The position numbers were made by a program, and so were the translations under genes. Of a stretch of DNA of 64,000 bases, positions 16,516 to 64,000 are shown in pieces. The number at the start of each line of letters is the position of its first letter. Positions within the stretch are counted from its first letter, which is position 1. The notes under the pieces were generated by a model, which saw nothing but the letters and a program-made list of their open reading frames with translations, searched no databases and was not told the origin of the DNA. Location of the stretch: sequence record MK250028.1. One strand, given 5' to 3'.

Positions 16516-17253
16516 ATGACTAGATCTGAATTTATTGAATGGTTAAAATCAGAAATAACAATGAGTAATACTATAAATATTTCTTTATCGGACCGTGAAT
16601 ATGAAAGACTTGTAGATAGAGAACTAAGAATGGTTTATGAATTGGATAATGATAGCGTGCGTTATGATAAATATATAATCCCACGAGATGTATTTTATTC
16701 TCAAGAATTTAGGAAAACTAGAACTATAAAATTTCCTGATTGCGTTTTATCTGTAGTTAAATTGGAAGAGATGAAAAGGAGAAATTATATGTATGGTGTG
16801 AACGACCCAGATCTATCATGGAACCGTATGTTTTAGACAGATATGTGGATGGGTCCGTAGATGGCGATGGACACTGTGATGTTTAGGACTATATAGTGGT
16901 CTAATTGGGATTAGTTAAAATAGTTTAATTTAGTTGATATAAAGCATAAGTGGAATAGACTTACACATTAGTTATTTGTGATGGGACATGATCCATATAA
17001 TGATGTTTATTGTGAAGTAGCTGTAAAGGTAGATGAACAGGAATTATTTGAAGATCCTTGGGTAAGACAATGGATTGCAGCTAAATGTAAGTTATAGGTT
17101 GTGAAAAAATTAGGAACATTTACAGTGACTGCAATTGGAGGTGTAACTGTAAATACAGGAACATATTCAGAAGAAGCAAATAATGATATAAATGATTGTA
17201 AAGAATATTGGACTAATTTACGTCAAGCAGATTTTTTCGAAACAGGTTGGTAA
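16516..17253 (+). CDS. neck protein, T4 gp13-like (TAG=Gln)
   Basis: continuous through TAGs to TAA 17251; C-terminal WVRQWIAAKCKLQ...GGVTVN...EEA matches the gp13 pattern. Confidence 0.75.
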
Positions 17254-17380
17254 TTAAAGAATTGGTTATTAATAAGTTAAGATATGTTAATAGAGAATGT
17301 AATATTTTGTAATTTATGAATATTGCATTCTCTATTTTTATAAAATAAATAATGTAAAATTAAGAATAATTTTAGTTAAT

Positions 17381-18805
17381 ATGGGATATAAAAGATACGG
17401 ATCAAGTATATCTATACCACAATTTGAAGAAGAAGAAGGAGAAGCAGTAAGTAGTGAATTAAGTTAGCGTTCACCTAGTAAAACTATATATTTTGGTATT
17501 AAAAAACCAAAAACTGATTCTGATTCAAATAGGTCTTGGCGAGAATTAACTAGTGCAGATTTTAATATATAGATTACAAGTGATACTACTGGATGTAGTG
17601 CAACAATAAAAAAAAATACAACTGATACTACAAATAAAACAGGTATTATTACTTATACATTATCTAAAAACTCTACGGGAAGTTAGAGACTTATAACATT
17701 TAAATATAAAGATACCGAATTATTTAAAATATTGTAGGATCCTGCGGAAGAAGATAATAATATATATGTATATTTAAGATATTGGGTATTTTTTAAAACA
17801 CCTTATTCCAATATTATAACATCAACAAATAATGATACAACTTTATATAGATTTTCATTAGGTATTGATTCAGAAGATCCTGATGCATATATAAGTTATG
17901 AAACATGGAAAGATACAGGTAATATAATATATCATGTAACTAATAATAAAGATTTAACAAGTATATTTAATGCAACGACTTCAATAAAAAAATTAGTAGA
18001 TAATGGGACATTAACATACATAGGAGGGAAAAATTTTGATAATAATACTATATCAAGTATTATAAAATTTCCAATAAAAATGTATAAAAATGAAAATACA
18101 CTTGTTCCTGTTAATGATAATAGTACTGTATATATATACTATGGTGGTTTTGAAGCGACAGTTAACGCAAATGATTATGTATATAGTAATGATAGTTTAC
18201 ATAGTATTATAAATTGGGGAAATGTTATAGATGGTGATGTAACATCTATTGGAAAGTATAAATATAATTCTGAAACTACTACAACATATACCGTTACATG
18301 GAATCTTAATAGTGGAACTATAAATGGAAATACTAGTAATCCTAAATAGGTAGGAATTACATCAGGTTCAACAGTATCTTTTGTAAATTATATACCACAA
18401 CGTACTGGTTATACTTTTGAAGGATGGGCAGAAACAAGCACAGCAACTTCTGGTAAAAAAACTGGTAATTCCGAACCTATAACATCAAATAAAACATTTT
18501 ATGCTATATGGAAAGTAACTACAAAAAATGTAATATTTAGTATTGGTTCTTCAACAAATTATATTACAATTACTTGGTCTGAACCAGGTTTACCCGATAC
18601 ATCTTTTACAATACAAGTAAAAGATGTTACAATTAGTAGTACATATGTAGTAACTATACCAGGAAATATACAAAATAACAGTTATAAAACAAACATAGCA
18701 TCTATTTCAGGTCATTCATATGGGTTAGTTAGTTGTTCACCTACAACATATAATAATGTTAATTATAGTGTATTTACTGGTTTAACATTAATAAATGGGT
18801 AGTAA
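17381..18805 (+). CDS. virion/adhesin-like protein with BACON-like domain and Listeria-Bacteroides (InlB B) repeat (TAG=Gln)
   Basis: open under code 15 to TAA 18803; YTVTWNLNSG...PQRTGYTFEGWAE...KTFYAIWK. Confidence 0.7.
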
Positions 18806-18922
18806 ATATTTTAATTCGTTATTCAAATCTAATTTTGCGTAACGAATTTTTTATTTATGTATATTAATACATAGGATTTTATATGTCTGTATAGATATTG
18901 AAATAATAAATTTCATCATTTT

Positions 18923-19615
18923 ATGTCAACATATAAAAAATATACATCATCCATAAATGCAAATATTTCTTCATCTGCTCATACAAATGAAGAATTTAAA
19001 TGGTATGTAGGTTCTTCAACATAGTCTACTGTTTATTTCGGCATGGAAGATAATGATAATAACTTTACAGGTAAATTATCAAATTCATCATATACATTAT
19101 CATCAGATGTATCCGGATGTTCTGCAACAGTATCAAATATAGATTCAACAAAAACTGCAGGAATAATATATTTAAATATACCAGCAAATACAAGTACAAC
19201 TAACAGAACAATCGTATTTAAATATAATACAGTTTCATTATTTACAATAATATAGTCAGGTAGCACAACTTCTGTAATTACTATAACATTTAGTATTGGT
19301 GGTTTTTAGGGAAATAATAAAGTTATAATTCACTGGACTGGAACTAATTTTTCATCAGATGGAACTACTGTAAGTTGTGGAATTAATGATAGTACGCCGA
19401 ATTCAGATGGTTCATATAATGCACAATTTACTATAACTATACCGTCAGGATATGGACAATCATATGCAACATGTGTTGGTGGATATGTATATAAAGGACA
19501 TAAATATTTTTTAATTGAACCATGTACACCATCATCATATGGTAATTATAGATTTAAATGTAATACTACAGAAGTTACTTATACAGATCGTATGACGGGT
19601 ACTATAACTACGTAA
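18923..19615 (+). CDS. BACON-like Ig-fold protein, paralog (TAG=Gln)
   Basis: SDVSGCSATV...ANTSTTNRTIVFKYNTVSLFTIIQ shared with 17381. Confidence 0.65.
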
Positions 19616-19674
19616 AGTGAGATATTGTATTTTCTAATTGAGTGTAGATATAAAAATTATTTTTTAATATTTTT

Positions 19675-20457
19675 ATGTCAACATATTAGAAATATCCTTA
19701 TAGTATACCAACGTTTACTATTAGTACACCAGCAAGTTCAGATTTAGTTAATTCTGACGGTGAATATGTATATTTAGGATTTGAAGATGAAGACGGTAAT
19801 TTTGTTGGAAATAATTCAATATCAAGTACAACTTCATTAATAATGTCTCCAAATACTGGAGGCTCTATTATAACGTATTCAACAGATACTACAAAAACTG
19901 CATCAAGAATACATTATTCATTTTCATAGAATACATCTAATACTTATACTATTTCATATAATAATACAGATTTATTTAAGATTGTTACACACAGTACAAG
20001 CGCAACAAAAACATATAATATATATTTAAGTTTAATAAATTTAAAAGATGTTAGTAGTTCTGATAACATTTCATATATATGTATATTTAAAAGCAATGTA
20101 GGTAATTTTCATGTAACTGATATTAATAGATTTGAATTAATGCAGGTATCAGTTTATAATAATTATATATTTTTTGGATATTCTTCAGATTATACAATGA
20201 TTTATGATACTTATAATGATATGAACCTTACATATAAATCAGGAACTAATTTTAGTAAATCAACATATGGTAATTGTTATATTGTTGATATAACAAATGA
20301 AAAAGTTTATATAGATACAAATGGTTATACAACTGAATCTATTACATATACATCTACATATTATATCTTTAGGTATGATGCTGGATATATGCAATACGTT
20401 TCATCTTTTAATATATATAATGATAATAATATCTATACATTAACAGTTACAACATAA
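19675..20457 (+). CDS. BACON-like Ig-fold protein, paralog (TAG=Gln)
   Basis: MSTYQKY start parallels MSTYKKY; YLGFEDEDGNF parallels YFGMEDNDNNF. Confidence 0.6.
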
Positions 20458-20507
20458 AAATAATATCATGAATAAATAATAAAAAGTTATTTTTTGATAT
20501 TATTTAT

Positions 20508-20921
20508 ATGAAAAGACATTCTATTCCATTAAATATACTTGATGAATATGCAAAAACAATTTCATCAAAATAGGTAAAAATGCTTTATGAATCAAAATGC
20601 AATAAGAAATNNNNNNNNNNNNNNNNNNNNNATATGAAATATCAAAATGATAAAAGTTATTCTATATATTTAAATGATTTCACTCTTGATGAAGCACATT
20701 CATCAGTAGACAAAGCATTAGTACGTTATGTAAATAAATATAAACTTCAATTCAACAAGGTATCGGATGGAGTTTACTTCTATACACCACTTGAAGAGAA
20801 TTATATTTCTTTACTTAAAAATCTTGTTCAAGATGGATTTGACATTGAACTCTTAAAGGAAAATGTAGATTCACAAAAAGCAACAGTTTATTTAGAAAAA
20901 TTAAAGTTAAATAAGAAATGA
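20508..20921 (+). CDS. hypothetical late protein (TAG=Gln)
   Basis: ATG 20508 in frame with the 20580 ORF through one TAG. Confidence 0.65.
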
Positions 20922-21625
20922 TTAAGATAAGAAGACGTAAACCTATTTTCGAGGACGATTAGAATACACAGCAATAGCAACAACCCGCAACAAATACTTA
21001 GCAACCAGCTACATAGGTGCCAGCTGCACAACCATAGTAGAATACAACTGCTCCATAGCAACCAACAAATAATCAACAACCAAATCAAACGCAAGATTAG
21101 AATAATAATCAACAACCATATGATTAGAATAATCAACAACAATAGCAACAACCAAATCCTAATGCATAGAAAGTATAGGATACATTGAAACAAATGGAGA
21201 ATACATGGTGGATGATTTCTGTTAACCTTCCTGATGAAATTCAAAAGAATATTCCTGATTTTAAACAAGGTAATCAACAAGCAGATCCAGCAATTAAAGC
21301 ATGGAATGATTTCAAACAAAATCCATCAGAAGATACATTTAAAAATTTCTTAAATGGATTTAAATCATTTGGCGGATTATCTGGTGATTAGAATGCTAAT
21401 AATAATCAACAACCATAGCAGAATAATGGAACAACAACTCAATAGCAACCTGCTAATAATACACAGCAACCTAATCAACAACCATAGCAGAATGTTAATG
21501 CAGGATTAAAAGCCGCATATTCATTCAGAAAGAATTTAATGGAAAATTTAGCTATTGCAAAATAGAAACAATATTATAATACAGTTTGTGAAGATTATTT
21601 TGATAAAAATGAATTTACATTATAA
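20918..21625 (+). CDS. Gln/Asn/Pro-rich low-complexity protein (TAG=Gln)
   Basis: poly-Q tracts written with CAA, CAG and TAG interleaved; ends TAA 21623. Confidence 0.8.
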
Positions 21626-21630
21626 TTATT

Positions 21631-22392
21631 ATGAAGAAATATAAATATGTTTACAACACAAAAACTGGACATTTTATAAAGAAACTTAATGAGGATGATT
21701 CAAATGTAAAAACCGATACAAATCAAGATAATAATAACTCTAATAATTCAACGGATAGTAAAGATGATGCTTCTACTGGAAATACATCTTTTAAATCTGT
21801 TGAGTCTGATGAAACAATTCAAGACCTTACTGCGAAAGCATAGGAAAATGAAAATAAGTTTCAACAAGACTTAAATACGCAATAGAAATTATTAGACGCA
21901 GCCAAAGCTACTGCATCAAATAAAACACCAGCAGGACCATATGATCCTGTTATGACAGATTAGAATGTTTTGAATATCATGAAGAAAATAAATGATATGA
22001 CAAAACAACATGCAATAGATTAGGCAAATTTTCAGGATTAGAAATTAGCTTAGCTTTAGAAATTATCACAAACAAATGAATCATATTATAAAATTCCAGA
22101 GAAATATAAATGGTTGAATGAATCAAATATTCACACAGCGAAAATCTATATGGGTAATCTTATTAAACCTGAAGAAGATGCTCCATTAAAAGGCATGGCT
22201 GATTTTAAGCGAGCGTTTAAAGATACTGACTTACTTTATGGAAAAGATAAGAACGGATACTTCGTTGTTTGTGTGGATTAGGAAGATTTTAATACTTTAT
22301 ATGACACTCTTGAAGAAAATTCTTATGTTAGAGACGAAATAATTGATACAGTTATGCCTTAGTTATTTGACAGACATGAAATGATCCAATAA
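21631..22392 (+). CDS. hypothetical late (possible head) protein (TAG=Gln)
   Basis: open to TAA 22390 under code 15. Confidence 0.7.
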
Positions 22393-22416
22393 AAATAATT
22401 ACATTAATATAAATTT

Positions 22417-23196
22417 ATGCAATATATAAGAACCACAGAAGATTTAGATCAAGATTTAATTTTATATGGAACATATCTGTTATATAATCCAACGACAAAT
22501 GTAACAAAGTTAAAAGTTTCAGAAAAACCTATATATATAGGATTAGATGATTTCGTTGAAGTATTAAATAGTCTTAAGAAGATTGCATCTGATTTAAAAA
22601 TAGTTCCTAATGAATATCCTGTATATCAATATATTCGTAGTAACAAATATAATGGTTCGACATGGAATATTGTTGCAGGTGTGGTTAATTCAGAGTTTAA
22701 AAAGATTGCAGATAAAGAATACTCAATGATTCCTAATATATAGAAGTTAATTCTTCCTAATAAGGAATATATTGATTTCCCACATTTTGCCGCTGTTTTC
22801 AATGGTCTCATTAATAAGCATGGTGACCTTTGTGGATATTGTGGTGATATTGTTCAGTTCGCAAAAGATATAAAAGAAAATCCAATGGTTGAATTTCCAT
22901 CTGGACATTTTGGAATCGAAGATTTAAGAACAGATATTGACGCTTATAATATATTTAAGATGAATAATAGCGATACGATAAATTCATTTAAATCTTATTA
23001 TGAAAATATGTCTGATAAGAAACGATTTTCATTATTTTTAGAAGATCATCCAAATATACTTGATAGCTTTAATAATTCAACCGATAATTTTTATCTTAAT
23101 ATATTAAAGCAAACAACAGATAAAGATTTAACAGATGAACATATAAAATTAGCATGTTAGAAAATGCAATTATATTTAGAAAATAATAAAGGTTGA
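22417..23196 (+). CDS. hypothetical late protein (TAG=Gln)
   Basis: joins ORFs 22417 and 22885 in one frame, ends TGA 23194. Confidence 0.7.
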
Positions 23197-23220
23197 GAAT
23201 AAACAAAATTCTCAACCTTT
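23188..23220. terminator. bidirectional intrinsic terminator
   Basis: AAAGGTTGAGAAT/ATTCTCAACCTTT hairpin between convergent genes. Confidence 0.75.
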
Positions 23221-23227
23221 TCTTTTA

Positions 23228-23875
23228 TTATAAGCTTTCTATATATTTCTTTATTCCTTCTACATGAATATCAATTATAGTATTCCTGCCTTCGTTACTC
23301 AATAGCCAGGAAGCATCTTCCTTGTTGTCCATAAACATATTCTCTGTTAAACATGCTGGACAATTTGTTTTACTTAATACATAGTAATTTGCTTCTTGAT
23401 CAGGATCACCATCTGAATAATCAGGTCGAAGTTTCTTTCCTAATGGTGTTAGTTTTTCTTCTGCTACTTTATATAATGCAGTTGCTAATTTATCACCTTC
23501 TGTTTGACCTTTACTTGTATATACAGACCATCCTTGTGCTTTATACCACTCACCATTTCCAGCTGCATTTACATGAATAGAAATAAAAATAGCTTTATTT
23601 CCAGATTTCTTTTCTTCTGCATATTTTGCATTAGCACGTTGAACGCGAAGACTTAAATCATGAGACTGACTTGTAATCTCTTCAACTTCAGGATGAACAA
23701 TATAACATCTATAACCTTCAGAAATTAATTTATTATAAACTTCATATCCTATTGCGCGAACATATGCATATTCTTTTAATTTAGTCTATGCATTATCAAA
23801 CACCGGACTGGATTTGCCAGGTGTATTTTGTCCGTGACCCATATCAAGCATTACTAAAACTTTACTCTTTTCCAT
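23228..23875 (-). CDS. N-acetylmuramoyl-L-alanine amidase (Amidase_3), probable endolysin (one TAG)
   Basis: LDMGHGQNTPGKSSP, LKEY, FISIHVNA, YYVLSKTNCPACLTENMFMDN; single in-frame TAG at 23786-23788. Confidence 0.92.
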
Positions 23876-23877
23876 AA

Positions 23878-25341
23878 TCAATAACTTTTATCATATAATT
23901 TAAATGTATCTACTGCTAATTCTTTCAAACAATTATTACTTAAACATACTCCATCATTTCCAGCCGTAGGCGCTAAGAAATTCTTCCATTTGTCTGAAAT
24001 ACTCTTATTTACCTTAATTGTTTTCCTATTGCGTTTACCTTGTTTAATTTCATCTTTACATCTCTATAAAGTAGAATTAAGATTATCATATATTTTTTGA
24101 ATATCTTCCTTATCCAATATATAAACGATATAATCAATATTACTAGTTCCTATATATCTTGGAAATAATACATATTTTATATTATCATCTGATAATATAT
24201 CCATTCCGCCTTTACGAGATATAGGAATTCTGAAATTATCTTCACTTGTACTCTTACGTTCAACAACAGCAAGCTCAAATTTTGCAGGATAATTTGGAAC
24301 ATTTGTTCTATTAGCAATATAAAAATCTCTACTACCAATACGCCTAGATGGTTCTCTTAATGATGCATACCCAAATTTATTTTTTAATACACCCTATATT
24401 CTCTATTTTAAATGAGAAGACGGATTATTATGCCCATAATCATATCTATCTTCATTAAGTGATTTCTTCACGCTAACTGCAATGGATTCAATTAAAGATT
24501 TATATAGTTCTTTTTTATTATTCATATTTTCAGTTAACTATAATTTTGATAACATATTTATTATTCGTTTATCAATGACAGCATACTAATCTATATCATC
24601 TACCATATCTGCATTTTCTATAATAGCTTTAAAAAATTCGTTGTTAACCTTATTATACATATAAAATGGAACATTATCTATATAACATGTACTTGTATTA
24701 AACAATACATATTTAAATTGCTTAATTAACTATTTAAATAATTCAACCAAACATTTTTCGTTTTCAAACTAACATTGTCTAATATAAACATTATTTGCTA
24801 ATTGACTTAATCCCTAATTTACAATCTAAGGAAAATTCTAAACAAATTTTAAAGTTAATTTATCATCTGTACTAGTTATCTATCTTTTATTTGATGTCTA
24901 TATAACAAATCTTTTTCTTTTATCTTTTAATTCAAATATGATCTTATCTGTTATCATATTATATTCATTAAACAACATATTAGCAAATGGTATCGCACAT
25001 GCATCATCATCTACAATTATATCATTATTTTCATACTATGCAGGATAAACCTATATGTAATTCAAATGTGTAAATGAATCATTAAAACTGAATAAGCATG
25101 ACAACATATTATATGTATACGGTAATATATCACCTTCACGTGTTTTATACTAACCTGAACAATGCTAAGGTTCATCATCTAATATTAATAAATAATGATC
25201 CTATACAACAGGAAACTAATATCTTTCTGTACCTAATTTCTTTATTAGTAACTATCCTATTTCTATAGGTACTGTTGTTCTCATTATAGAATTTGTTAAT
25301 TCAATATTATTACCAAAATCTATGTCATTAAATAAACCCAT
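23878..25341 (-). CDS. hypothetical late protein, possibly two fused units (TAG=Gln)
   Basis: no TAA/TGA in frame from 25341 to 23878; internal ATG at 24525 begins a leader-like segment. Confidence 0.6.
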
Positions 25342-25372
25342 TAAATATAAAATAACTATTTATTGTATTTAT

Positions 25373-25714
25373 TTAAAATGGTAATTCTTCACTAGGATCT
25401 TGCTGATAGAATGGAAGACAATTATTTCCGTAATGTTTCTTGAAATACTTTTTCTGAATCTTTTTTTCTTCACGTGATTGTCTCATTGATTCCCTCGATA
25501 CTGTGAAACTTGGACAATTTTCACAAATACCATACATATATTCATGTCTCTCGTTCTCTATATCATCATATGTTCTATTAGTAAAATGAGGTTGACGAGC
25601 ACAATGGAACCATGAAATAAACATAGGATATGGATCATCAGTTACCATATCATCATAAGATTTATCATGCGTACACTGACACATACAATATTTCTTTCTT
25701 AATCTACTTTTCAT
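25373..25714 (-). CDS. Cys-rich hypothetical protein
   Basis: CxC and CxxC motifs in a 113-aa ORF. Confidence 0.6.
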   Translation of the reverse strand: MKSRLRKKYCMCQCTHDKSYDDMVTDDPYPMFISWFHCARQPHFTNRTYDDIENERHEYMYGICENCPSFTVSRESMRQSREEKKIQKKYFKKHYGNNCLPFYQQDPSEELPF

Positions 25715-25830
25715 ATTTGTTAAATTTTAAACCATTATTATATAGTTTATATAATAATGTATAACTAATGTTTACTAAACTTTATTTTTATAATTAAATA
25801 CAATAATTATAAAATATTTTATTTATAGTT

Positions 25831-26967: not shown

Positions 26968-26976
26968 TTTAATTAT

Positions 26977-29139: not shown

Positions 29140-29169
29140 AAATAAATAATTAAAATACATTTATTTTTA

Positions 29170-31289: not shown

Positions 31290-31376
31290 TATAAATAAAA
31301 GTCTTCATATTAGTTTATGAAGACTTTTTCTTTTTTATGACTATATAAATGTTAATTAACTATAATTTAATAATAG

Positions 31377-33204: not shown

Positions 33205-33212
33205 ATTAATAT

Positions 33213-33395
33213 ATGAAAGTAATAATTAAGAATTATGATTCTACAAAAGCAAATGATATTGTAATTCCTGTTGAAAATAATATGGATAAACATGTAGACT
33301 TTTCTAGCGGTTATGTAGTATTATCAGATGGAAATAATGTTAAGAAAGTTTATATTGATTTTAACAAATATCCTGAAGTAGAATTAGATTTATAA
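33213..33395 (+). CDS. small hypothetical protein
   Basis: 60-aa ORF between module genes. Confidence 0.5.
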   Translation: MKVIIKNYDSTKANDIVIPVENNMDKHVDFSSGYVVLSDGNNVKKVYIDFNKYPEVELDL

Positions 33396-33416
33396 TATAT
33401 AAAAATATTTTAAAGT

Positions 33417-47109: not shown

Positions 47110-47138
47110 TATTATAATAATTTAAATATAGAACTATT

Positions 47139-48731: not shown

Positions 48732-48738
48732 AATAACA

Positions 48739-48778
48739 AATAGGATAGATTACTAATTAATAGTATATCTATCCTATT
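48739..48778. terminator. bidirectional intrinsic terminator
   Basis: AATAGGATAGAT/ATCTATCCTATT between convergent genes. Confidence 0.75.
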
Positions 48779-48784
48779 TTATTT

Positions 48785-52882: not shown

Positions 52883-52897
52883 AATTTAAATATCATT

Positions 52898-54448: not shown

Positions 54449-56145
54449 TAGTTATTTAATGTTTCATTTATTTTTGTTTCTATCTATGATATTTCATCGC
54501 ATATCTTAGATAAATCATCTATTTGTGATTTTATATTATCCCTTGTATTTTTTAATATATTAACTTGATAAGAACTCATTTGTTTTGTATTTGAATAATC
54601 TTTCTTAAATGTTGCAATATTAACCTAAATTTTCCCATATGATATTAATGAAGATTTTAAAACTTTTGAATATACACCATATAATGTCATTAAAATTTTA
54701 AATTTATCTCTATCTGTTCTTATAACTTTCTTTATCTCAGAACATAATACCTAACCGGTTTTTGTATATGCTTGTAACTATGGTAATATTTTTTTCAAAT
54801 CATCATTAAAATTAGAAATTCCTATCATCGAACGGTTTTTTGCAATTAATGCTTTATATCTCTTTATATTGTTTTCTGCTATTTTATTACAATATTCATC
54901 ATCACCATATAAATCGTTATAATCATACTCTGATAATTTAACGCCATAATTAAAATATCTATTCTAATCGCCATTCGCATATGGTTTATATTTACCAAAT
55001 AAATCTTTTACCCATTTATATGTCTATCTATTATCAAATGCTTCCCTCTAATCATTCTTACGTTTATTAAAACCATTTTCTGTTTTATAATCATTATAAC
55101 TTTTTACTGTTGAATCCGGTAATGTATAATGTTTATCATTAGTTGATCTATATGTAGATACAACAGAACCATTAAAATCCTTATGGACTTCTTCTGGATA
55201 ATAAATTATTACATAATCATTTAAAGAGGAACCCCAACCTGTACACTTTGATAAATTACTTGCTTTTGATGTTACAGCTCCGACAGTTTTTAATTTCATT
55301 TTACCATTATGCTAATTTAAATAAAGATACTTATCAACAAAATCAATACCTACTAAATCTCGTTTATCTCCAATAAATGACATACGTGCAATAGTAGGAA
55401 ATTTTAATTCAGTACCATCATTTAAAGGCATGGTTAATGTATTTACAATAAGATTATCTTTCTTAACAGCATTTTCTATTCTATCTTTAGATATATCATC
55501 ATTCAAGTACCAACGTCTACCTGTTGTCGCAGTAACTAAAGGATTATCATTATCTATTGCAAATAGTTTTAATGTATTATTACAGCTTACAACTAATATT
55601 TCTCCTTCTTCATTAAACCAAAAACAAAGGTTATCTTTAGATGCTTTATTTACTTTTTCTTTAAGATTTTTATCTTTTTTAATTTCCTATAATGTATATT
55701 TTTCAAAATGTTCATCAGTAAGATTAAATAAATCCATTCTATATTTTGTGAAATAACCATATGTGGCATCAGAAAATGCAATACTTGGGATCAACTATGG
55801 ATCTGGTTTTATAAATAGTTTTGTTGTATAATTTACATATTGGTTAAACAATTCCATATATTTTTTATGTAAAGCGCGTTTATCATCATCTGAAACTATA
55901 CAATCACCTTTATAATAAACACTATCTTTAACTTTATTATTCCATGAATTAAATGTATTCTCTATAATAGATTTTAATTCGTTATAATACTATTTTGCTT
56001 TATAATACATTGTACCTGGATAATACATCTTATAATAAATAAACATTCCTCCTTTATCATTTAGAATATCATTAACTAATATATCAGACTGAAGTTTCTC
56101 GGTAAGATATTTTTCTGTTATATATTTCTTTAAACTAAATTGCAT
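54448..56145 (-). CDS. hypothetical late protein (TAG=Gln)
   Basis: in frame with the listed ORFs 55506 and 55299, ends TAA overlapping the next ATG (TAATG); N-terminal YITEKYLTE. Confidence 0.7.
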
Positions 56146-56241
56146 AATAATCCTATTTAATATTCTATTTTAATTATTTATTTTGATAATTTGATATATT
56201 GCGAAATAAATAATAAAACCAATATTTTTATTAATACGGAT

Positions 56242-58863
56242 ATGGGTAGTTTAAATTAGAATAGTATAGCAGATCAATATAAAAATCCTTTAAAAAAATA
56301 CGGTATAGATATATCGAATGAGAATTTGGATGATGTTATTTCAAAAATGACATCATTAACTGACTCATCTTTATACTCATAGCAAAACAGTCCATTATAT
56401 GGTGTATTTAAAAATGTGCTTGATACTTCTGCAAAGCAAGCTGATGCATTTGAACCGGGTGGATCAATAAATGATGAAATTACTAGTTACCGAGCATGGG
56501 ATCCTAGACTTCATAGAGTGGACGGATTTGTATCTAGGTCTGCGACAAGCGATGATCACCCAACAGTTGTTCCTTTCGCTTCAGAAACAGCAGCAGGAGC
56601 ATTTTATGATATGGTATTTACAATAGAAAAAGGTATCGGTGACAAAATGTCTGAAACTACTGTATATAAAGAAGGAACAAATACTAAAGATTCAAATGAC
56701 AATGAAAAAACATCATCAGATAATACGTTTTATACAGTAGATAAAAATAGTGGTGAAACTATTACAGATGTAAATAAATCAACAAAAAATTTTTATTTAC
56801 CTAATAAAACAGGTAGTAATGGAGTAAATGCAGACACAATAAAAAGTTAGATTTTAAATGACGGAGATTCTTATGGTGTGGCTTCTATTGTTAATCCGTA
56901 TACATTAACAAAATTATGTGGAGGCCTTGTAAAAGTCAAAGGAAATAATGATGAAAAAGGTAATAATGCAATAGAAGTAGAAAATCACATGTATGATATT
57001 AGAGATTCCCGAAGATTTTATGGTAATGTAATTGAAGGTGAAAATAATACAGATTTTTTAACCGTTACAAATCCTACGACGACTAATATAATAACATGGA
57101 GCAATTAGGATAGATGGGGACGAACACCATATTATTTTTAGGATTTTGTTTTTTGTAAATATTGGAATATTATACCTAATAACCGTTTAATAACATTAAG
57201 AAAGTATCATGCACCTGTATATGATAATCTTCAATTTTCAAATATGTTTGATAACAAAAAAACACATCCGTTTGCACCTATTGCTACAGTTGTAACATAC
57301 TTTGGAGATGATACTGGCAATACATTATCATCATTATTTGGTTTTACCGCCGGTACAAAATGGAGAGAATTAAAATCAGATGTACATGATGTTCAAGGAG
57401 ATTCTGGTACAGATCCACATGCAGTTATTGATAACATGTTCACAGGCGGTGGCGGATTTTCTACCGGTGAATCTAATATAATGCAACAAGTTATTGGTGG
57501 TGCAAATATGCTTACTGGTAAAATGTTTTCATTAGGTAAATTTGTCGGGTTATTAAGTCCAAATGGATATAACATGGGTAAGGATTAGGCAGTATTTGAT
57601 AAAATCTCATAGGCGAATGTGGATCCATCAGAACAAATATATGCAAATAAAATTAAAGGTCCTGTTAATAGAATTGAAACAACTAAAGCAAGAGATGCCG
57701 GTATTGTATTTGATTAGAAATTTAGTTTAACTTGTCAATATGTAGCAAGACCTATTGGTGGTGTTAATACAAAAGCAGCAATGCTTGATATATTATCAAA
57801 CTGCATGGAAATGGCATCTGCTGATGCAGTATTTTGGGGTGGTGGATATAGATTTAATATTAAGCCTCACATGTATCCATTTAAAAATACAGCATTTAAA
57901 AATAGAATAATGGATGATTTATATGCTGGTCGTATATTTGGTAAAGATGGAGCATTATCACATACAGTAGAAGGTATAAAATCATTTGGTACAGATGCAT
58001 CCGGTAATTTCTCTTGGAGTGAAATCGGTAAACATTTAAGTGAATATCTTGGTGAGACTTTAGGTGCATTAGGTGAAATGTTCAATACATTACAGAATAT
58101 GGTTTTTGGTTCAGGCGGTAGTTCAATTGGAGACTGGTTAAAAGGTAAAGGAAATGATATTGGAGGCGATAGTAGCACAGCTGGTGATAATGGGGCGAAA
58201 AAACTTAATAGCTTAGGTAAAAATCTTAATATGATGTGGCGATCAAAAGTTATACAAGCATCAACAATGCCATCCATTACCGGTATGCGTGCATTATTAA
58301 CAGGTGAAGCAGTTGGAAACTGGCATTTAACAGTAGGTAATCCTCTAAATCCTATTATGGTAATTGGTAATCTTATCTGTACAGATATGAAAGTAGAAGT
58401 CGGAGAAGAATTAGGTCCTGATGATTTTCCAACAGAATTAAAAGTTGTATATACGTTAGAACATGGTATGCCACGTGATAAATCTGGTATACAATCTATG
58501 TTTAATAGAGGTGGTGGTCGTATATATTAGTTACCTGACTGGATTAGAGCATCTTCTGATTATGAAACAAAAGTTGATAACTATACGGGTGGAAGTAACT
58601 TCTATCAACCTTCATATATGAGTTCGTCAAAACTTATGGCAATATCTGGTGCTCATGGATACTAGACCTTTAAATATGATAAAGGTAAAACACCTGATAT
58701 AAATGCACATACATCAAATGTTGTTATAGCTAAATTCACACCGCCTGATGTAGATGCAGCTATCAGTAATATAGTTGATAAATCTTCATCATTCTTTGGT
58801 TCTAATAATTCATCTAGAGCATGGATTAGAGGTACAACAGCTACAAGAAAACTTATGAATTAA
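56242..58863 (+). CDS. baseplate/tail-tube-cap-like structural protein (TAG=Gln), ~873 aa
   Basis: joins four listed ORFs; conserved-looking GNWHLTVGNPLNPIMVIGNLIC...GPDDFPTELKV. Confidence 0.6.
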
Positions 58864-58868
58864 TTAAA

Positions 58869-59603
58869 ATGTTTGTATATACAATAGATAAAAAACCAGA
58901 AATTACAGATTCAAAAGGAAATACGATTGTTGATTTTATTAAACCATTATTTAATAATGAATCAACCGGTGTTGCAGATTATCAGATTATGCGTGTAGAT
59001 GCTGAAAAATACCAAATGCGTCCAGATCTCATATCAATGGCAATGTATGGTGATATTGATGAAGCAGAATATATATTAAAATTCTCTGGTATATCAAATC
59101 CTTTTTCATTAGATAAAGATGATATATTAAAAATTCCTAATGATTAGGAAGTATATGGTATGATGGCGGTTAATTCACCAGATGAAGATACCACAAATAC
59201 TGTAGATACTGCAGCTGAAATACGTCATAATTTTAAATATTATGATCCAGAATTAAATCCATATAATAAAGATGGTCAATCATATAGAGATTTGGAAAAT
59301 AAGAAAATACCATCTGGAATTATTGATAAAGGTAAAATTGTCAATAAAACAGGTAATATCATGGTACCATATATATCAGAAGATGGACGAACTGCAGTTA
59401 CTATCCGAAATGGTAAAGTATATTTTGGTGAAGATAGTGGTTTAAATATAGCATCATCTGAAAAAATATCACAGGTCGCGAACATTACATCAACCATATA
59501 GAATGCAATAAATAATACAATGACAAAATTATCAGATTCAAACTGTTTATATAATGGTTCGAACTTAGCAGATTTTGTAAGAACAAATTTTAATAATAAC
59601 TGA
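58869..59603 (+). CDS. baseplate wedge protein, T4 gp53-like (TAG=Gln)
   Basis: RPDLISMAMYGD...ILKFSGISNPFSLDKDDILKIP LysM-like gp53 motif. Confidence 0.75.
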
Positions 59604-59610
59604 TTGAAAT

Positions 59611-62600
59611 ATGAATACAAAATATCCTTTAAATGGTAGACTGGCAACATTAGCAGATTTGGTACATGAATACGGTCCAAATTCTGGATGGCCTAGTAAT
59701 AAAACATATGATCTTTTAACATTAAATGCAGATGACACATAGCCATTTTAGACTTTAATTTTTAAATCTACATTAGATTCTAATAATAAATTTTAGGCGG
59801 AAATACCATATGAAATTGTATATTTTGATGATGTATATTCTAAAAATCAAAAAGATAATAATGGGAAAAATATGAGGCTTATATAGAGAAATGACAGCTC
59901 TGTATTTTATAATAATGAAGAATATACTACTTATGGTTAGTTAAGTCCATCATCATATATAATTGCAAATATTGTTTCAAATCCTACTAAAATTAAAAAT
60001 GGTTATTTTGGATTCAAATTTATTGGCGCTAATATAGATAAGCAATCACTCAATTATTAGCAATATTATTATAATTATAAGACATCTGATGGAGAAGCTA
60101 CTGTTATGTATGCGCTTAGAAATATATTATATATATTAAAAAAGTCAAGTAAGACGAACGATAATTAGAAAAAACATTTTATTAATAGTATTTTTTCAGA
60201 TTATACTGAATTAAAAAATTCAGACTATTATAAGAATGAGGAAAATAAACCTATAATGGTAGATGTTCTAAAAGATATATTAGATAATACAGATAAAGAA
60301 TTTTCATCATGGCAATTAGATACAGATGCATATAAATATTTAGGTGATGCTATATGGACTTCAAAACATATATATTATAAAAATTATACAAGTGAAAAAG
60401 ATAGTACAAAAAATGAATATGAACAAAATATTGTAAAAAAAGCTCGAGCTGCTAAATATTTTACTAATGCCATTGTTAAATTCAATAATTTAAATAATAC
60501 TATACGTACTATATTAGATATTAATACTACGCAAAAAAATAACTATTATTCATATAATAGTATATTTGATGATTCATTATATAGGAGATTATTATATTTT
60601 TTTGACTTATTTTTAAATTCATAGCGTTTTTTTATAAGTTTTGTAACATCATTTAGATTTTCAAAAATTTCGAATTATTCATATTTATAGAAAGATCCAG
60701 TTTTAAGGTGTGATTTGGGTGTAATGCAGTTATATGAATATATTATAATATAGAATGCTGTACATGATTGGCAAACAGCATTGCCCGCTGGTGAAATAAC
60801 ATATAATACATCTATAAATATTATTATACAATATAAAGTAAAATATAAAAATTTAACGCAACTTAGTAATATAATAACAACAACATTAGGACCTATTACA
60901 TTTGATGATATTAGAAAATATAGAACACCTACTGTTAAAGATACAAATGGAAATAATGTTGAAAATGATATATGGTATGCATTAAAGACATACCCAAAGA
61001 ATAGTAGTACGTTACCTAATGAAATAAATCCTAATTTACATGGTAATTCTATTACACCAGGATTATATAGTACAAATACTATTCTATATGGAACATCGTT
61101 TTTCCCAGCTTTACCTCATAAAGATTTTGAAAATAATAATGATTATAATATTAGTAAAGTAAATTATTCATTAGGACTATTAAGATGGCCCGTTGGTGAA
61201 AACTTAACATTGTTATCATTAGATGATGTAAAGAATTCAATGAATAATCCTAATTTCATTAGTCCTATAACAAATCAAAAAAACTATGCAGATACAAGTG
61301 ACGAAACATTATTTGGTGAAAATGATCCTAATGATATTATTAAAAAAAGTGGCATAGCTCCATTTGGTGTATTACGTATACATACTTCATTAGATACATC
61401 AGACGAAAATAAATATGGTTCATCTATCTATTTTGATATAAAATTATATAGATGTAAAAATTATTATTATATATCTACGGAGAATGCTGATAGTGACGAT
61501 GCAAATGTTTATGCATATTTTATGCCAAAGTATACAGATACAACGCCTTATATATCATTACCAATAATTAAATTAAAAAATGATGAAGACAATAGTATAA
61601 ATAATATTATCACCGAATTAGATAAAAAATTTAAGGATGGATATATTTACTCAATACCATCTCATACAATTATTACATATTTTACAATTCAAAGTGGAAC
61701 TGCAAAAACAATAATATATGCATCTGGTAGAACTGATACTCAAAATAATCTCGGTTCTGATACATATACAAATAAAAATTAGATTACGTTCTATTATTAT
61801 GTAGAAGATAGCAATGAATGGGTACAAGTAACTGGCGATTATATAAATATTAATTCAAATCCATCTGGAAATAATATAAGTAAACAATATGAAATAACTT
61901 TTAATTTATCACAAAATTATCATCAATATTGGCGATTTACATTAAATAATATAAATTAGTATTATTATTTTAGATGTAATTATTATGATAAACCAAAAGA
62001 TAACACATCATTTATAAATATGACTATACATCATCTTTTTGTATCTGATGAGTCTTTAATATAGGGAATGATAGAATATCAATTAGGTATGAGAAACCAA
62101 CAGGATAAATCTACAAATCAAATATCATTAAAATATGCAGTATATAATACAATTACTGATATTAGAAATGATAATGAAAAACCTAATGATAAGTCATCAT
62201 TATCAATTATAGAACATGCAATTAATAACGCTGAACAATAGAATGTTATTATATGTATTGATAAAATAATATACATAGAACCTATTGCTTTTAAATCAAC
62301 AGAACGATATGTATCAGAAAAATTTTATGGAAATATATATAGTCCGTTCCATGTAGCATATGAAACAAAATCATTTGATGGTATCTCAGAGTTTAATATA
62401 CAAAAACAAATATATGGATATAATTTTAATTCATGTGCATTATTTGATAAAACTTCAGACTCGCGTGTAAAAATAGAAAAACTATATAAAAAAGAAAGTG
62501 TAAATGTATATTTAGCATTTGAACCTATTTATATAATTAATAATGGTAATACATTTAAAGACAATAATGCAAAAGATGAAGATATTATAAATGAGTATTC

Positions 62601-63627
62601 TACTTATTTTAATACATGTTCAATAACAAATATAAAATTAAGCAATAATGGTACAGAACAAACTATTAACAAGAATTCTGGTAATTCAAACAATAATTTT
62701 ATTAAAAGTATATTTTCTAAATCTGTATATATTGACGCAACATCAATATGTATAAGTGTTACAAGTAATAAAACAGAACCAATTTCTTCACTTATATATG
62801 ATACAACCGATGGTTTAATAAACACCTATTTGTTCGATTTTGATATAAAATATTACAAATATAAAAATAATACAGAGAAATTTGAAGAAACAAATAGTGT
62901 AAATGTAACAAATAAAATATAGTTAATGTAGCTAAATAATACATTAAGAAATATATAGTTGAATGGTGATGAGTAGTATTTAATAAATATTGTTCTTAAA
63001 AAATTCAAGGAAAGATTAAAACATTTTACTATAACTGTAAGTTCAGACGTTCCAGCATTAAATGGTTCATGTCAAATACAAATAAAAACACTTCCTAATG
63101 AATATGAAGAAGGTATTATATCAGAAAATGATACATATCAAAATACTATACAAGTTCCAGAAAATACACAAATACATGTGAAAAATACATATAATTGGGA
63201 TGAGTATAAAACATATAAATTCCATGGGTTTTCTGTTAATAGTGTAGATAAAGGTAAAGAATTTAATTTAACTGTAACAGAGAATATATAGATATATATG
63301 TTTATAGAATACGATGGTGGTAATTCTGGTGGTAATTCTGATTCAGGTAGTATTCCTGGTAATGTTACAATTACAGAAGAATCGAATAAAAATGGTAAAA
63401 TTATATTAACATTATCTATTTCATCCTCTGATCAAAATACTTTAATTAGATATGTTACATCAACTTCAAATGTAGAACTAACACCAACATTATCAAATAC
63501 AAGTATATATTCAGATTAGCAGAAGTTAGAATTTAATAACGATATAACAATAGCAGCATGTGGTTATAATGCATCAAATTATAAATGGGGTCCAAAGAAC
63601 TAGAAACACTTTACATTAAATGAATAA
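59611..63627 (+). CDS. very large virion/tail-associated protein with C-terminal Fn3-associated-like domain (TAG=Gln), ~1338 aa
   Basis: no TAA/TGA in frame over about 4 kb; C-terminal LTLSISSSDQNTLIRYVT...ITIAACGY. Confidence 0.7.
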
Positions 63628-63633
63628 AATATA

Positions 63634-63668
63634 AAAAATCCAAACAACTAGAAATTGTTTGGATTTTT
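63634..63668. terminator. bidirectional intrinsic terminator
   Basis: AAAAATCCAAACAA/TTGTTTGGATTTTT. Confidence 0.75.
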
Positions 63669-63726
63669 ATATTATAAAAATAATTTATAAAGTTAACAGT
63701 GGAATATTTCTTATATTTAAAAACAT

Positions 63727-64000
63727 TTAATCAATGCCTAATTTAATACGATTTGAAATAAGATTCCATACCGTATTGGTAATAAAGTTTTCCTTTAGTT
63801 TCTTACCAACAGCAGGTTCAATATCTGACTTAAATGTTTCTACTACATATTTACCATTACCAGTTCTGAAAGCCTCAGTAATAGCTACAAGATTTTTCTT
63901 AGTTTGTTTCTCTATATAAAGACGAATATCTTCCTTAGTAGAGTTAGCACTAAGAGTAATCATATTTTCATTTAAAAGTTTGATGCCTGCCTTGTTAATA
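63727..64000 (-). CDS. 3' end of a gene starting beyond the window
   Basis: frame stays open to the window edge (INKAGIKLLNENMITLSAN...). Confidence 0.6.
   Translation of the reverse strand, partial: INKAGIKLLNENMITLSANSTKEDIRLYIEKQTKKNLVAITEAFRTGNGKYVVETFKSDIEPAVGKKLKENFITNTVWNLISNRIKLGID

What the first reader, a model, noticed from the sequence alone, without database searches (positions are those of the whole stretch)
16516..64000. Block-wise genetic code use: TAG=Gln in late genes, near-absent in early genes
Seen: 16516-30684 and 48785-64000 contain many in-frame TAGs (about twenty in terminase alone) and every gene I traced ends at TAA or TGA. Genes in 1-16409 and 30696-48731 are essentially TAG-free, with exceptions at 11792, 46768 and the 40 kb endonuclease. 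Boundaries coincide with hairpin terminators. Established: Lak and some crAss-like phages use code 15, and recoded codons have been proposed to gate late and lysis genes. No suppressor tRNA(CUA) is visible in this window.
Basis: partly seen in the sequence, partly recalled or inferred. Interest (0 to 1): 0.7.

Follow-up and report, generated by a model that had tools for sequence, protein, structure and literature searches.

The report
Lak megaphage: TAG=Gln confined to late genes

Summary
In-frame TAG runs at 22 and 17 per 1000 codons in 16516-30684 and 48785-63627, against 0.2 and 1.2 in the other two blocks. Off-frame TAG is equal everywhere.

The window is 100% identical to Prevotella phage Lak-B9. 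For this phage group, code 15, TAG-free regions, TAG-rich structural regions, RF2 and suppressor tRNAs are already published (Devoto 2019; Crisci 2021; Borges 2021). As posed, the finding is already known.

What I add:
- TAG behaves as a freely exchanging synonymous Gln codon in late genes but is never gained in TAG-free genes.
- TAG-free genes also almost never use TAG as a stop, so they are code-neutral rather than written in a second code.
- The two classes carry different conserved upstream motifs: AATAAATA (like the T4 late promoter) about 30-40 nt before TAG-rich genes, and TATCTTTG (like the Bacteroidetes -7 element) before TAG-free genes.
- The window's TAG-free block holds the phage's only release factor gene (RF2, 43649-44785).
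- Just upstream of it lies a tRNA-Leu(UAA) gene split by two group I introns.
- The "missing" tRNA(CUA) of this lineage exists elsewhere in the genome, with its anticodon split by a related 245-nt group I-like intron.

The parts
1..16409 (+). TAG-free block E1: 29 ORFs and one in-frame TAG (11792). It includes a NADAR-domain protein (2815-3351) and NAD-dependent DNA ligase (8374-10509, minus strand). 1010 nt are masked between 11399 and 16267.
16430..16468 (+). Terminator-like hairpin with U-run after the last TAG-free gene of E1.
16484..16491 (+). AATAAATA 'late' motif 32 nt before the first TAG-rich gene (16516). The same motif lies 23-37 nt before the starts at 17381 (motif 17344), 20508 (20471), 25341 on the minus strand (25357-25373), 29170 (29141), 56145 on the minus strand (56175-56182) and 56242 (56205). 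It also lies 48 nt before the TAG-bearing endonuclease ORF 40311 (40263).
16516..30684 (.). TAG-rich block L1: 14 ORFs with 101 in-frame TAGs. It includes the terminase large subunit (26977-29139, 21 TAG) and an endolysin (23228-23881, minus strand, 1 TAG).
30696..31289 (+). TAG-free 197-aa gene that starts 11 nt after a TAG-rich gene, with no promoter motif or hairpin between them. It is probably co-transcribed with the late operon. Its orthologues in Lak-C1 and Lak-A2 are also TAG-free.
31297..31328 (.). Bidirectional terminator-like hairpin (13 bp); the likely real end of the L1 transcription unit.
31377..48731 (+). TAG-free block E2. It holds a class II aldolase-like protein, a substrate-binding/OmpA fusion (35046-36629), an ABC permease-like protein and ATPase (38052-39883), the tRNA-Leu gene, RF2 and others. 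TATCTTTG-type motifs lie 37-55 nt before the starts at 34634, 42265, 44898 and 47139 (and, in E1, before 6718 and 10646).
40014..40811 (+). Two ORFs that match consecutive parts of a homing/HNH endonuclease profile (phrog_559). They carry 5 in-frame TAGs and are absent from Lak-C1 and Lak-A2: a mobile insertion of the TAG-using class inside a TAG-free block.
42821..43563 (+). tRNA-Leu(UAA) gene in three exons (42821-42840, 43150-43164, 43513-43563), split by two group I introns: intron 1 at 42841-43149 in the D-loop, intron 2 at 43165-43512 between anticodon positions 34 and 35.
   Evidence: Rfam RF00028 scores 40.5 bits (E = 1e-8, below the gathering score of 50) at 42967-43141. Both 5' exons end in U and both introns end in G. 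The spliced 86-nt product is a perfect cloverleaf. The acceptor stem and variable arm show compensatory changes against Lak-C1. Lak-A2 has an uninterrupted tRNA-Leu(UAA) at the same syntenic place.
43567..43609 (+). Terminator-like hairpin (17 bp, z = -5.6) between the tRNA-Leu gene and RF2.
43649..44785 (+). Peptide chain release factor 2 (378 aa, 0 TAG). It is the only RF gene in the genome. GGQ is present, the codon-recognition tripeptide reads SPY instead of SPF, and there is no programmed frameshift.
46768..46770 (+). Single TAG 7 codons before the TAA stop of a TAG-free-class gene (46231-46791). It may serve as a real stop before the switch. The Lak-C1 and Lak-A2 orthologues have no TAG.
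48738..48779 (.). Strong hairpin between convergent genes at the E2/L2 boundary.
48785..63627 (.). TAG-rich block L2: 6 large ORFs with 85 in-frame TAGs. Two have weak profile hits, to head closure (52898-54448) and tail sheath (58821-59603). A divergent pair of AATAAATA motifs lies at 56175-56212.

Best explanation
The window comes from a Lak megaphage that uses one genetic code in which UAG is glutamine. UAG is allowed only in genes of the late programme (packaging, virion, lysis and some others).

The remaining genes contain no UAG at all. The host's standard machinery can therefore read them at the start of infection, and they remain readable after the switch. This TAG-free class includes the switch machinery. 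RF2 lies in this window; it terminates at UAA and UGA but not UAG. Elsewhere in the genome lie the tRNA arrays, two sigma-family genes and a Gln-like tRNA(CUA).

I infer the following order of events:
1. Host RNA polymerase starts at Bacteroidetes-type promoters (TATCTTTG class).
2. The phage then makes RF2 and the suppressor tRNA. In this lineage the suppressor must first be spliced from a group I intron precursor. Host GlnRS charges it, since the phage has no GlnRS.
3. Transcription shifts to AATAAATA-type late promoters.
4. Only then can the TAG-rich messages be translated in full.

Shown here: the TAG distribution, its Gln-like substitution pattern, selection against TAG in the other class, the two motif classes, the RF2 gene and the split tRNA genes. 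Inferred: timing, promoter function, splicing, charging by GlnRS, and any neutralisation of host RF1.
For: - Distribution and statistics.
- Identity of the genome.
- TAG = Gln: across 123 TAG-versus-sense aligned sites between Lak-B and Lak-C1, Gln is the commonest partner (38). The Gln substitution profile beats the next residue (Lys) by 109 log-likelihood units.
- Selection: in late genes, conserved Gln sites split into 45 CAA/CAG pairs, 38 Gln-to-TAG exchanges and 48 TAG-TAG pairs. In the TAG-free genes of E2 there are 84 CAA/CAG pairs, including 24 synonymous switches, and 0 exchanges to TAG (p = 1e-14).
- Every gene keeps its class in Lak-C1 and Lak-A2 at about 80% DNA identity.
- Late functions: terminase, endolysin, and weak head-closure and sheath hits.
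- Promoter classes: AATAAATA lies 25-42 nt upstream in 45/156 TAG-rich against 9/284 TAG-free genes (p = 1e-14). TATCTTTG lies 30-62 nt upstream in 0/156 against 33/284 (p = 4e-7). Both are position-locked and are conserved as islands in otherwise diverged spacers of Lak-C1 and Lak-A2.
- RF2: TIGR00020 scores 403 bits against a cut-off of 370, and it is the only RF gene.
- No GlnRS-type gene; two sigma70-family genes, both TAG-free.
- Suppressor: Lak-B1/B9 has no intact tRNA(CUA). At B1 412033-412349 sits a Gln-like tRNA gene, at the locus where sister genomes have tRNA(CUA). Its loop becomes CTCTAAA (anticodon CUA) once a 245-nt intron is removed by the U(-1)/terminal-G rule. That intron aligns end to end with intron 2 of the window's tRNA-Leu.
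- Literature agrees on code 15, TAG-free regions, RF2 and suppressors.
Against: - There are no expression, proteome or splicing data for this genome.
- 'Early' and 'late' are inferred from gene function and motifs only.
- Only about 29% of TAG-rich genes and about 12% of TAG-free genes carry the exact motif at the right distance. Many genes lie inside operons, and other promoter classes surely exist.
- Borges et al. report that Lak replication genes are mostly TAG-using, so TAG-rich is not simply 'structural'.
- Gene 30696-31289 is TAG-free yet seems to ride on a late operon, and the endolysin has a single TAG. Gating is therefore not uniform.
- The Rfam score for the suppressor intron is weak (15.7 bits, E = 0.2). 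All four known copies of that allele are identical, so there is no covariation, and no intron-less copy of the allele was found.
- My genome-wide numbers come from a crude longest-ORF caller run on a hybrid of Lak-B1 flanks plus the Lak-B9-identical window.
Confidence: 0.85

Rival explanations
1. The TAG-free stretches are DNA acquired from standard-code bacteria or phages, so the mosaic reflects origin rather than timing.
For: Several TAG-free genes look host-derived: RF2, the ABC transporter parts, aldolase-like, ligase and NADAR.
Against: The class of every gene is conserved across Lak-A, -B and -C at about 80% identity. In late genes Gln-to-TAG exchange is as frequent as Gln conservation, so amelioration would long since have introduced TAG. 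Yet there are 0 gains against 24 synonymous CAA/CAG switches. The class also tracks a dedicated upstream motif. The one clearly recent insertion, the endonuclease at 40 kb, is of the TAG-using class.
Confidence: 0.04
2. UAG in this lineage is read mainly by the conserved tRNA(UUA), through U-G wobble as in classical ochre suppressors, rather than by the intron-split tRNA(CUA). The phage RF2 would then keep UAA termination efficient.
For: A tRNA with loop CTTTAAA is present in Lak-B1, -B9, -C1 and -A2 and is reported in 51/51 Lak genomes, against 38/51 for Sup-CTA. B1/B9 have no uninterrupted tRNA(CUA).
Against: 88% of genes in both classes end in TAA. Late genes show no shift to TGA and no excess of back-up stops, which sits awkwardly with an active UAA reader. 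The CUA gene is retained at its locus, with an intact cloverleaf after splicing, in four Lak-B genomes and three further metagenome contigs. The tRNA(UUA) does not look Gln-like (G1-C72).
Confidence: 0.1
3. TAG in late genes is a neutral by-product, tolerated wherever a suppressor is already present, and not a device that gates translation. Timing is set by promoters alone.
For: Late genes already have their own promoter class. TAG density varies widely among late genes, and the endolysin has only one.
Against: This rival differs from the best explanation only in purpose, and it predicts the same sequence pattern. TAG supplies 45-47% of Gln codons in late genes, far above the share of CAG (17 and 14 CAG codons against 101 and 85 TAG). 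That hints at more than drift, though mutation bias in a 26% GC genome could also favour TAG over CAG.
Confidence: 0.3
4. The pattern is an assembly or binning chimera of two phages that use different codes.
For: None found.
Against: The same block order is present in nine independently curated circular Lak-B genomes and, at about 80% identity, in Lak-A and Lak-C. Switches occur within operon-scale distances, and off-frame composition is the same in all blocks.
Confidence: 0.01

Closest known systems
Lak megaphages as described by Devoto et al. 2019 (PMC6784885), Crisci et al. 2021 (PMC8346664) and Borges et al. 2021 (bioRxiv 10.1101/2021.08.26.457843)
   Same: It is the same genome group; the window is 100% identical to Lak-B9. 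Code 15, regions over 5 kb without TAG, TAG use in structural regions, RF2 in every genome, Sup-CTA and Sup-TTA tRNAs, tRNA introns and highly expressed large intergenic regions are all reported there.
   Different: Those papers contain no mention of promoters. They list only one tRNA intron for the baboon genomes, in tRNA-Tyr. Their table, as far as I could read it, shows Sup-CTA for only three baboon genomes. The group I nature of the interruptions, the split tRNA(CUA) of B1/B3/B6/B9 and the doubly split tRNA-Leu next to RF2 are not stated in the text I could read.
crAss-like and other TAG- or TGA-recoded gut phages (Yutin 2021, PMC7886860; Peters 2022, PMC9523058; Borges 2021)
   Same: Recoded stop codons are concentrated in late structural and lysis genes, suppressor tRNAs are present, and the hosts use the standard code. 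Gln at TAG has been shown by metaproteomics for two crAss-like phages. Borges also notes a recoded intron endonuclease sitting in an early gene, which parallels the TAG-bearing endonuclease at 40 kb here.
   Different: In crAss-like phages the recoded genes form one contiguous module. Here they form many modules, down to single genes.
'Code-change operon' of TGA-recoded Jade phages (Borges 2021, Fig. S6)
   Same: Switch machinery written without the recoded codon: a release factor that spares the recoded stop, together with translation-related genes.
   Different: [quoted passage not shown] Here RF2 sits beside a tRNA-Leu, there is no aminoacyl-tRNA synthetase, and the suppressor is about 120 kb away.
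Phage T4 late promoters (TATAAATA at -10, read by gp55/gp33 with the sliding clamp; established knowledge)
   Same: An A/T-rich octamer (A/T)ATAAATA with no obvious upstream element, at a fixed short distance before late genes.
   Different: This is a sequence resemblance only. I did not search for gp55/gp33 homologues and no start sites are mapped. The phage has two sigma70-family genes instead.
Bacterial and plastid tRNA-Leu(UAA) group I intron (established knowledge)
   Same: Intron 2 of the window's tRNA-Leu(UAA) sits between anticodon positions 34 and 35. It follows a U and ends in G, as the classical intron does.
   Different: The same gene has a second group I intron in the D-loop. To my knowledge bacterial tRNA group I introns sit in the anticodon loop, so this position is unusual; that rests on memory, not on a check made here. 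A related intron splits positions 35/36 of a suppressor tRNA elsewhere in the genome.

Membership tests
Code 15 (UAG = Gln) recoded phage | Conserved genes are open only if TAG is read as sense | tested here: met
   ORF coverage rises from 0.40/0.49 to 0.96/0.99 in the two blocks. Terminase profile matches span residues 53-581 across many TAGs.
Code 15 (UAG = Gln) recoded phage | TAG aligns with Gln in relatives | tested here: met
   38 of 123 TAG-versus-sense sites are Gln. The Gln profile is best by 109 log-likelihood units. Only Lak relatives were used.
Code 15 (UAG = Gln) recoded phage | Suppressor tRNA with anticodon CUA | tested here: inconclusive
   There is none in the window and no intact one in Lak-B1 or -B9. 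A Gln-like gene at B1 412033-412349 yields CUA only after the inferred removal of a 245-nt intron. Splicing is not shown.
Code 15 (UAG = Gln) recoded phage | A release factor that spares UAG (RF2), and no phage RF1 | tested here: met
   The gene at 43649-44785 passes the prfB cut-off (403 against 370 bits) and fails the RF1 cut-offs. It is the single RF-1 domain hit in the genome.
Code 15 (UAG = Gln) recoded phage | Gln found at UAG positions in the protein | not testable with these tools
   This needs metaproteomics. It has been done for crAss-like phages (PMC9523058), but I saw none for Lak.
Bacterial RF2 (prfB) | SPF codon-recognition tripeptide and GGQ | tested here: not met
   GGQ is present. 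The tripeptide aligned to E. coli SPF reads SPY. The effect on specificity is unknown.
Bacterial RF2 (prfB) | Programmed +1 frameshift near the start (autoregulation) | tested here: not met
   A single uninterrupted ORF matches the profile from position 1.
Group I intron | Conserved catalytic core (P3-P7), scored by the Rfam model | tested here: inconclusive
   tRNA-Leu intron 1 scores 40.5 bits (E = 1e-8), below the gathering score of 50. The suppressor intron scores 15.7 bits (E = 0.2). tRNA-Leu intron 2 has no hit of its own but aligns along its whole length with the suppressor intron, including the P7-like boxes.
Group I intron | 5' exon ends in U paired to G in P1; intron ends in G | tested here: met
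   All three junctions obey both rules and give perfect cloverleaves. By eye, short guide pairings follow the 5' splice sites of the suppressor intron and of tRNA-Leu intron 2 (GGAG and GAGT).
Group I intron | Self-splicing | not testable with these tools
   This needs an in vitro splicing assay or RNA reads across the joints.
T4-type late promoter | TATAAATA-like -10 element specific to late genes | tested here: met
   AATAAATA lies 25-42 nt upstream in 45/156 TAG-rich against 9/284 TAG-free genes, with a sharp peak at 30-40 nt, and is conserved in Lak-C1 and -A2.
T4-type late promoter | gp55/gp33-type factors | not tested
   Only sigma70 region 2 was searched, giving two genes.

The most novel reading that the evidence does not exclude
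In the Lak-B1/B3/B6/B9 lineage the switch to UAG = Gln depends on a suppressor tRNA whose anticodon (CU|A) is interrupted by a self-splicing group I intron. A sister intron, plus a second one in the D-loop, interrupts the tRNA-Leu(UAA) gene next to the phage RF2. The two codon-usage classes are wired to two promoter classes: host-type, and T4-late-like. Ribozyme splicing would then be an obligatory, and possibly timing, step in a change of genetic code. It would also explain why some recoded phages seem to lack a suppressor tRNA.
Probability: 0.5. Interest if true: 0.6.

Novelty: already known. Interest (0 to 1): 0.35.

Why it matters
The finding itself re-discovers a published property of Lak phages, so it adds nothing as a discovery. 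It is a sound positive control for the scan, because a reader without tools correctly recognised code 15 and its uneven use.

Three details may be worth a specialist's look:
- A sequence-level link between codon class and promoter class. This gives the 'late gene' assumption behind the recoding-as-timer model its first in-genome support for Lak, and it makes the model testable by start-site mapping.
- A concrete reason why standard tRNA scans report no TAG suppressor in part of the recoded phages: 13 of 51 Lak genomes (Crisci 2021) and about 60% of TAG-recoded genomes (Borges 2021). An intron in the anticodon would hide the gene.
- Part of the 'large, highly expressed intergenic regions' and 'enigmatic tRNA introns' of Lak phages may be group I ribozymes.

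Tried and rejected
- ARAGORN's single-intron reading of 42821-43564 as tRNA-Leu(GAG) with a 649-nt intron. Rejected because it has a poor D arm and an over-long variable region. The two-intron solution gives a perfect tRNA-Leu(UAA).
- ARAGORN's reading of the B1 412033 gene as tRNA-Ser(CGA). Rejected because a short-variable-arm tRNA is not a Ser type. The junction one base over satisfies the U/G splice rules and gives the same loop as the sister tRNA(CUA) genes.
- Search for an intron-less copy of that allele, to prove the junction: none in IMG/VR or in JGI metagenome contigs. Three further intron-bearing copies were found, but all are identical, so there is no covariation.
- Read mapping to see splicing or expression.
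- Signature of UAA read-through that might explain tRNA(UUA): stop usage and back-up stops do not differ between the two gene classes.
- AATAAATA 77 nt upstream of the B1 suppressor gene: not conserved in B2, C1 or A2, so I make no claim from it.
- Pfam and PHROG searches gave nothing for most large late proteins.
I did not resend them elsewhere.
- The generic sigma-70 scan found fewer sites than in shuffled sequence, so it is uninformative here.
- No whole genome is held for the window. I rebuilt a working copy from the Lak-B1 record outside the window before noticing that Lak-B9 is the exact source. B1 and B9 have the same tRNA hits, shifted by 17-20 nt.

Full report
IDENTITY

The window is 100.0% identical to Prevotella phage Lak-B9 (MK250028.1, positions 248001-312000). 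It is 99.9-100% identical to Lak-B1 and about 80% identical to Lak-A1, -A2 and -C1. These are curated circular genomes of 540-552 kb at 26% GC, from baboon and human faeces. No annotation is held for them.

THE OBSERVATION

A longest-ORF tiling shows that 16516-30684 and 48785-64000 are only 40% and 49% coding under table 11, but 96% and 99% coding if TAG is sense. The other two blocks hardly change.

In-frame TAG density is 22.4 and 17.2 per 1000 codons in the two TAG-rich blocks, against 0.23 and 1.16 in the others. TAG in the two off-frames is equal in all four blocks, which rules out composition as the cause (Fisher p = 4e-47).

In the rich blocks TAG supplies 45-47% of all Gln-type codons. 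The three N runs inside the finding keep the flanking long frames in register at their written length. I did not try to recover the masked letters, so TAG counts for the genes that contain Ns are lower bounds.

WHAT TAG MEANS

I aligned the eight TAG-rich genes between 26977 and 63627 codon by codon with their Lak-C1 orthologues. This gave 48 TAG-TAG sites and 123 TAG-versus-sense sites. Gln is the commonest partner (38), followed by Lys, Glu, Ser, Thr and Asp, which is the usual neighbourhood of Gln. A likelihood comparison against the empirical substitution profile of each residue puts Gln 109 log units ahead of the runner-up.

Among conserved Gln sites of late genes, 38 are Gln-to-TAG exchanges against 45 CAA/CAG pairs. 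In 15 TAG-free genes of the neighbouring block there are 84 CAA/CAG pairs, 24 of them synonymous switches, and no exchange to TAG (p = 1e-14).

Every gene from 26977 to 63627 that has an orthologue keeps its class in Lak-C1 and Lak-A2. So TAG is an ordinary synonymous Gln codon in one class of genes and is actively excluded from the other.

ONE CODE, NOT TWO

Across the genome (a crude caller run on a hybrid of B1 flanks plus the window) I find 552 ORFs with 1374 in-frame TAGs. 338 ORFs have none, and there are more than 150 alternations between classes, often gene by gene. The neat blocks of this window are therefore the exception.

Of the 52 ORFs with a single TAG, most have it within the first few percent of the ORF. 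That is over-extension of the ORF upstream of the true start. Only four have it within the last 6% of the ORF, where it could be a real stop; 46768 is one of them.

TAG-free genes therefore use TAG neither as sense nor, practically, as a stop. They are readable under either code. Stop usage (88% TAA, 12% TGA) and back-up stops are the same in both classes.

WHAT THE CLASSES ARE

The TAG-rich blocks hold the following:
- the large terminase (21 TAGs);
- an endolysin (phrog_435, E = 4e-41, one TAG);
- weak head-closure and tail-sheath matches.

The TAG-free blocks hold the following:
- NAD-dependent ligase and a NADAR protein;
- an aldolase-like protein;
- a substrate-binding/OmpA fusion;
- an ABC permease-like protein and ATPase;
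- release factor 2.

UPSTREAM MOTIFS

An unbiased k-mer contrast of upstream regions gave two class-specific motifs.

AATAAATA lies 25-42 nt before the start of 45/156 TAG-rich genes but only 9/284 TAG-free genes (p = 1e-14), with a sharp peak at 30-40 nt.

TATCTTTG, preceded by TG and a T-run, lies 30-62 nt before 33/284 TAG-free genes and 0/156 TAG-rich genes (p = 4e-7).

The first resembles the T4 late promoter TATAAATA. The second fits the Bacteroidetes -7 element TAnnTTTG. Both comparisons rest on established knowledge, not on a test made here.

In the window the late motif precedes 16516 (exactly at the first boundary), 17381, 20508, 25341 (minus strand), 29170, 56145 (minus strand) and an in-frame ATG at 56242, which is probably the true start of the 56191 ORF. 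The other motif precedes 6718, 10646, 34634, 42265, 44898 and 47139. Both motifs survive as islands in diverged spacers of Lak-C1 and Lak-A2. The two Lak papers I searched for the word (Devoto 2019, Borges 2021) do not mention promoters.

BOUNDARIES

- E1 to L1: a hairpin with U-run at 16430-16468, then the late motif at 16484.
- E2 to L2: a strong hairpin between convergent genes at about 48738-48779.
- L1 to E2: nothing in the 11-nt gap at 30684/30696. A bidirectional terminator follows one gene later, at 31297-31328. The TAG-free gene 30696-31289 probably belongs to the late transcript.

SWITCH MACHINERY IN THE WINDOW

Gene 43649-44785 encodes a 378-aa release factor. It passes the curated RF2 cut-off and fails the RF1 cut-offs. 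It aligns with E. coli RF2, keeps GGQ, reads SPY where RF2 has SPF, and has no frameshift site. It is the only RF gene of the genome.

The 1-kb 'non-coding' gap before it is a tRNA-Leu(UAA) gene in three exons. The Rfam group I model hits 42967-43141 (40.5 bits, E = 1e-8, below gathering). Comparison with Lak-C1 shows five compensatory changes in the acceptor stem and one in the variable arm.

Cutting after the U at 42840 and at 43164, and after the G at 43149 and at 43512, gives a perfect 86-nt cloverleaf. Intron 2 lies at the classical 34/35 site; intron 1 lies in the D-loop. Lak-A2 has an uninterrupted tRNA-Leu(UAA) at the same place. A 17-bp hairpin separates the tRNA from RF2.

THE SUPPRESSOR

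The window has no tRNA(CUA). ARAGORN and the Rfam tRNA model find no intact one in Lak-B1 or -B9 either, whereas Lak-C1 and Lak-A2 have one.

The flank of the C1 gene maps to B1 412363-412584. Beside it, at B1 412033-412349, lies a gene with a U1-A72 acceptor (Gln-like), good D and T arms, and an anticodon arm interrupted by 245 nt. Removing the insert after a U and after a G gives the loop CTCTAAA, which is anticodon CUA and the same loop as in the sister genes.

The insert aligns end to end with intron 2 of the window's tRNA-Leu, including the P7-like boxes and the 3' end. Its own Rfam score is weak.

B1, B3, B6 and B9 carry this allele, identical in all four. B2, B4, B5, B7 and B8 carry an intron-less, different tRNA(CUA) at the same spot. 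This fits the supplementary table of Devoto et al. as far as I could read it, where Sup-CTA appears for only three baboon genomes. Three IMG/VR contigs carry the identical split allele, and no intron-less copy of it was found.

The phage has no GlnRS-type gene, so charging by the host enzyme is inferred. A tRNA(UUA) is conserved in all the Lak genomes I looked at and remains unexplained.

COMPARISON WITH WHAT IS KNOWN

- Devoto et al. 2019 state that TAG is unused in large parts of the genomes but used in regions encoding structural proteins. They also report RF2 in all genomes, predicted CTA and other suppressors, and introns in some tRNAs.
- Crisci et al. 2021 report Sup-CTA in 38/51 and Sup-TTA in 51/51 Lak genomes, and Gln at 75-85% of aligned TAG sites.
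- Borges et al. 2021 describe Lak structural and lysis genes as multiple alternatively coded modules and propose recoding as a late-gene gate.

The finding as written is therefore already known.

LIMITS

- There is no expression or protein evidence. Timing, promoter function, splicing and charging are all inferences.

Noticed in passing
window 42821-43563: The tRNA-Leu(UAA) gene carries two group I introns. One is in the D-loop, which to my knowledge is an unusual site, since bacterial tRNA group I introns normally sit in the anticodon loop. This 1-kb 'intergenic' stretch may be one of the highly expressed large intergenic regions reported for Lak phages.
   Followed up: yes
Lak-B1 record 412033-412349 (L008:50-366); identical in Lak-B9 at about 412050-412366: A Gln-like tRNA gene whose anticodon loop is split by a 245-nt group I-like intron; the spliced anticodon is CUA. 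Alleles with and without the intron segregate among the nine baboon Lak-B genomes.
   Followed up: yes
Lak-B1 record 344976-345048 (L006:32993-33065): A tRNA with anticodon UUA (ochre type) is conserved in Lak-B, -C1 and -A2, although TAA is the stop of 88% of genes. I found no sequence signature of TAA read-through or avoidance. Its function is unexplained.
   Followed up: partly
Lak-B1 record 201303-201478, minus strand (L005:1303-1478): A tRNA with an 8-nt anticodon loop (ARAGORN reads a four-base anticodon, TTTT) lies next to a 96-nt tRNA-like gene with an insertion in its variable region.
   Followed up: no
Lak-B1 record 423028-423276 (L008:11045-11293): Two adjacent tRNA-like genes have good acceptor, D and T arms but 57- and 69-nt inserts where the anticodon arm should be. 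The second insert contains CTGACGAG, which is reminiscent of a hammerhead core. They were not resolved.
   Followed up: no
window 40014-40811, and L012:13613-14392 (Lak-A2): TAG-bearing homing-endonuclease-like ORFs are inserted in TAG-free neighbourhoods. In Lak-B this is a fragmented phrog_559 gene after the ABC ATPase, with a late-type motif 48 nt upstream. In Lak-A2 a different zinc-finger ORF with 5 TAGs lies between tRNA-Leu and RF2. Selfish genes seem to belong to the late codon class.
   Followed up: partly
window 36702-38065 and 41738-42187: Four ORFs of about 150 aa all best-match one single Lak-C1/A2 ORF, which indicates a paralogue expansion in Lak-B.
   Followed up: no
window 35046-39883: A phage-encoded transport module sits in the TAG-free class: a substrate-binding domain fused to an OmpA-like peptidoglycan-binding domain, a permease-like protein and an ABC ATPase.
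   Followed up: no
window 43649-44785, residues 203-205 of the protein: The phage RF2 has SPY where bacterial RF2 has the SPF stop-codon recognition tripeptide, plus an insertion of about 8 residues after GGQ.
   Followed up: partly
window 11792: An in-frame TAG lies at codon 21 of an otherwise TAG-free ORF (11732-12196), with no alternative start close behind it. The gene contains a masked stretch, so I did not compare it with other copies.
   Followed up: no
window 2300-2815: A 515-nt gap without an ORF contains both motif types (an E-like motif at 2417, late-like motifs at 2704 and 2756). It may be another RNA gene or a long leader.
   Followed up: no
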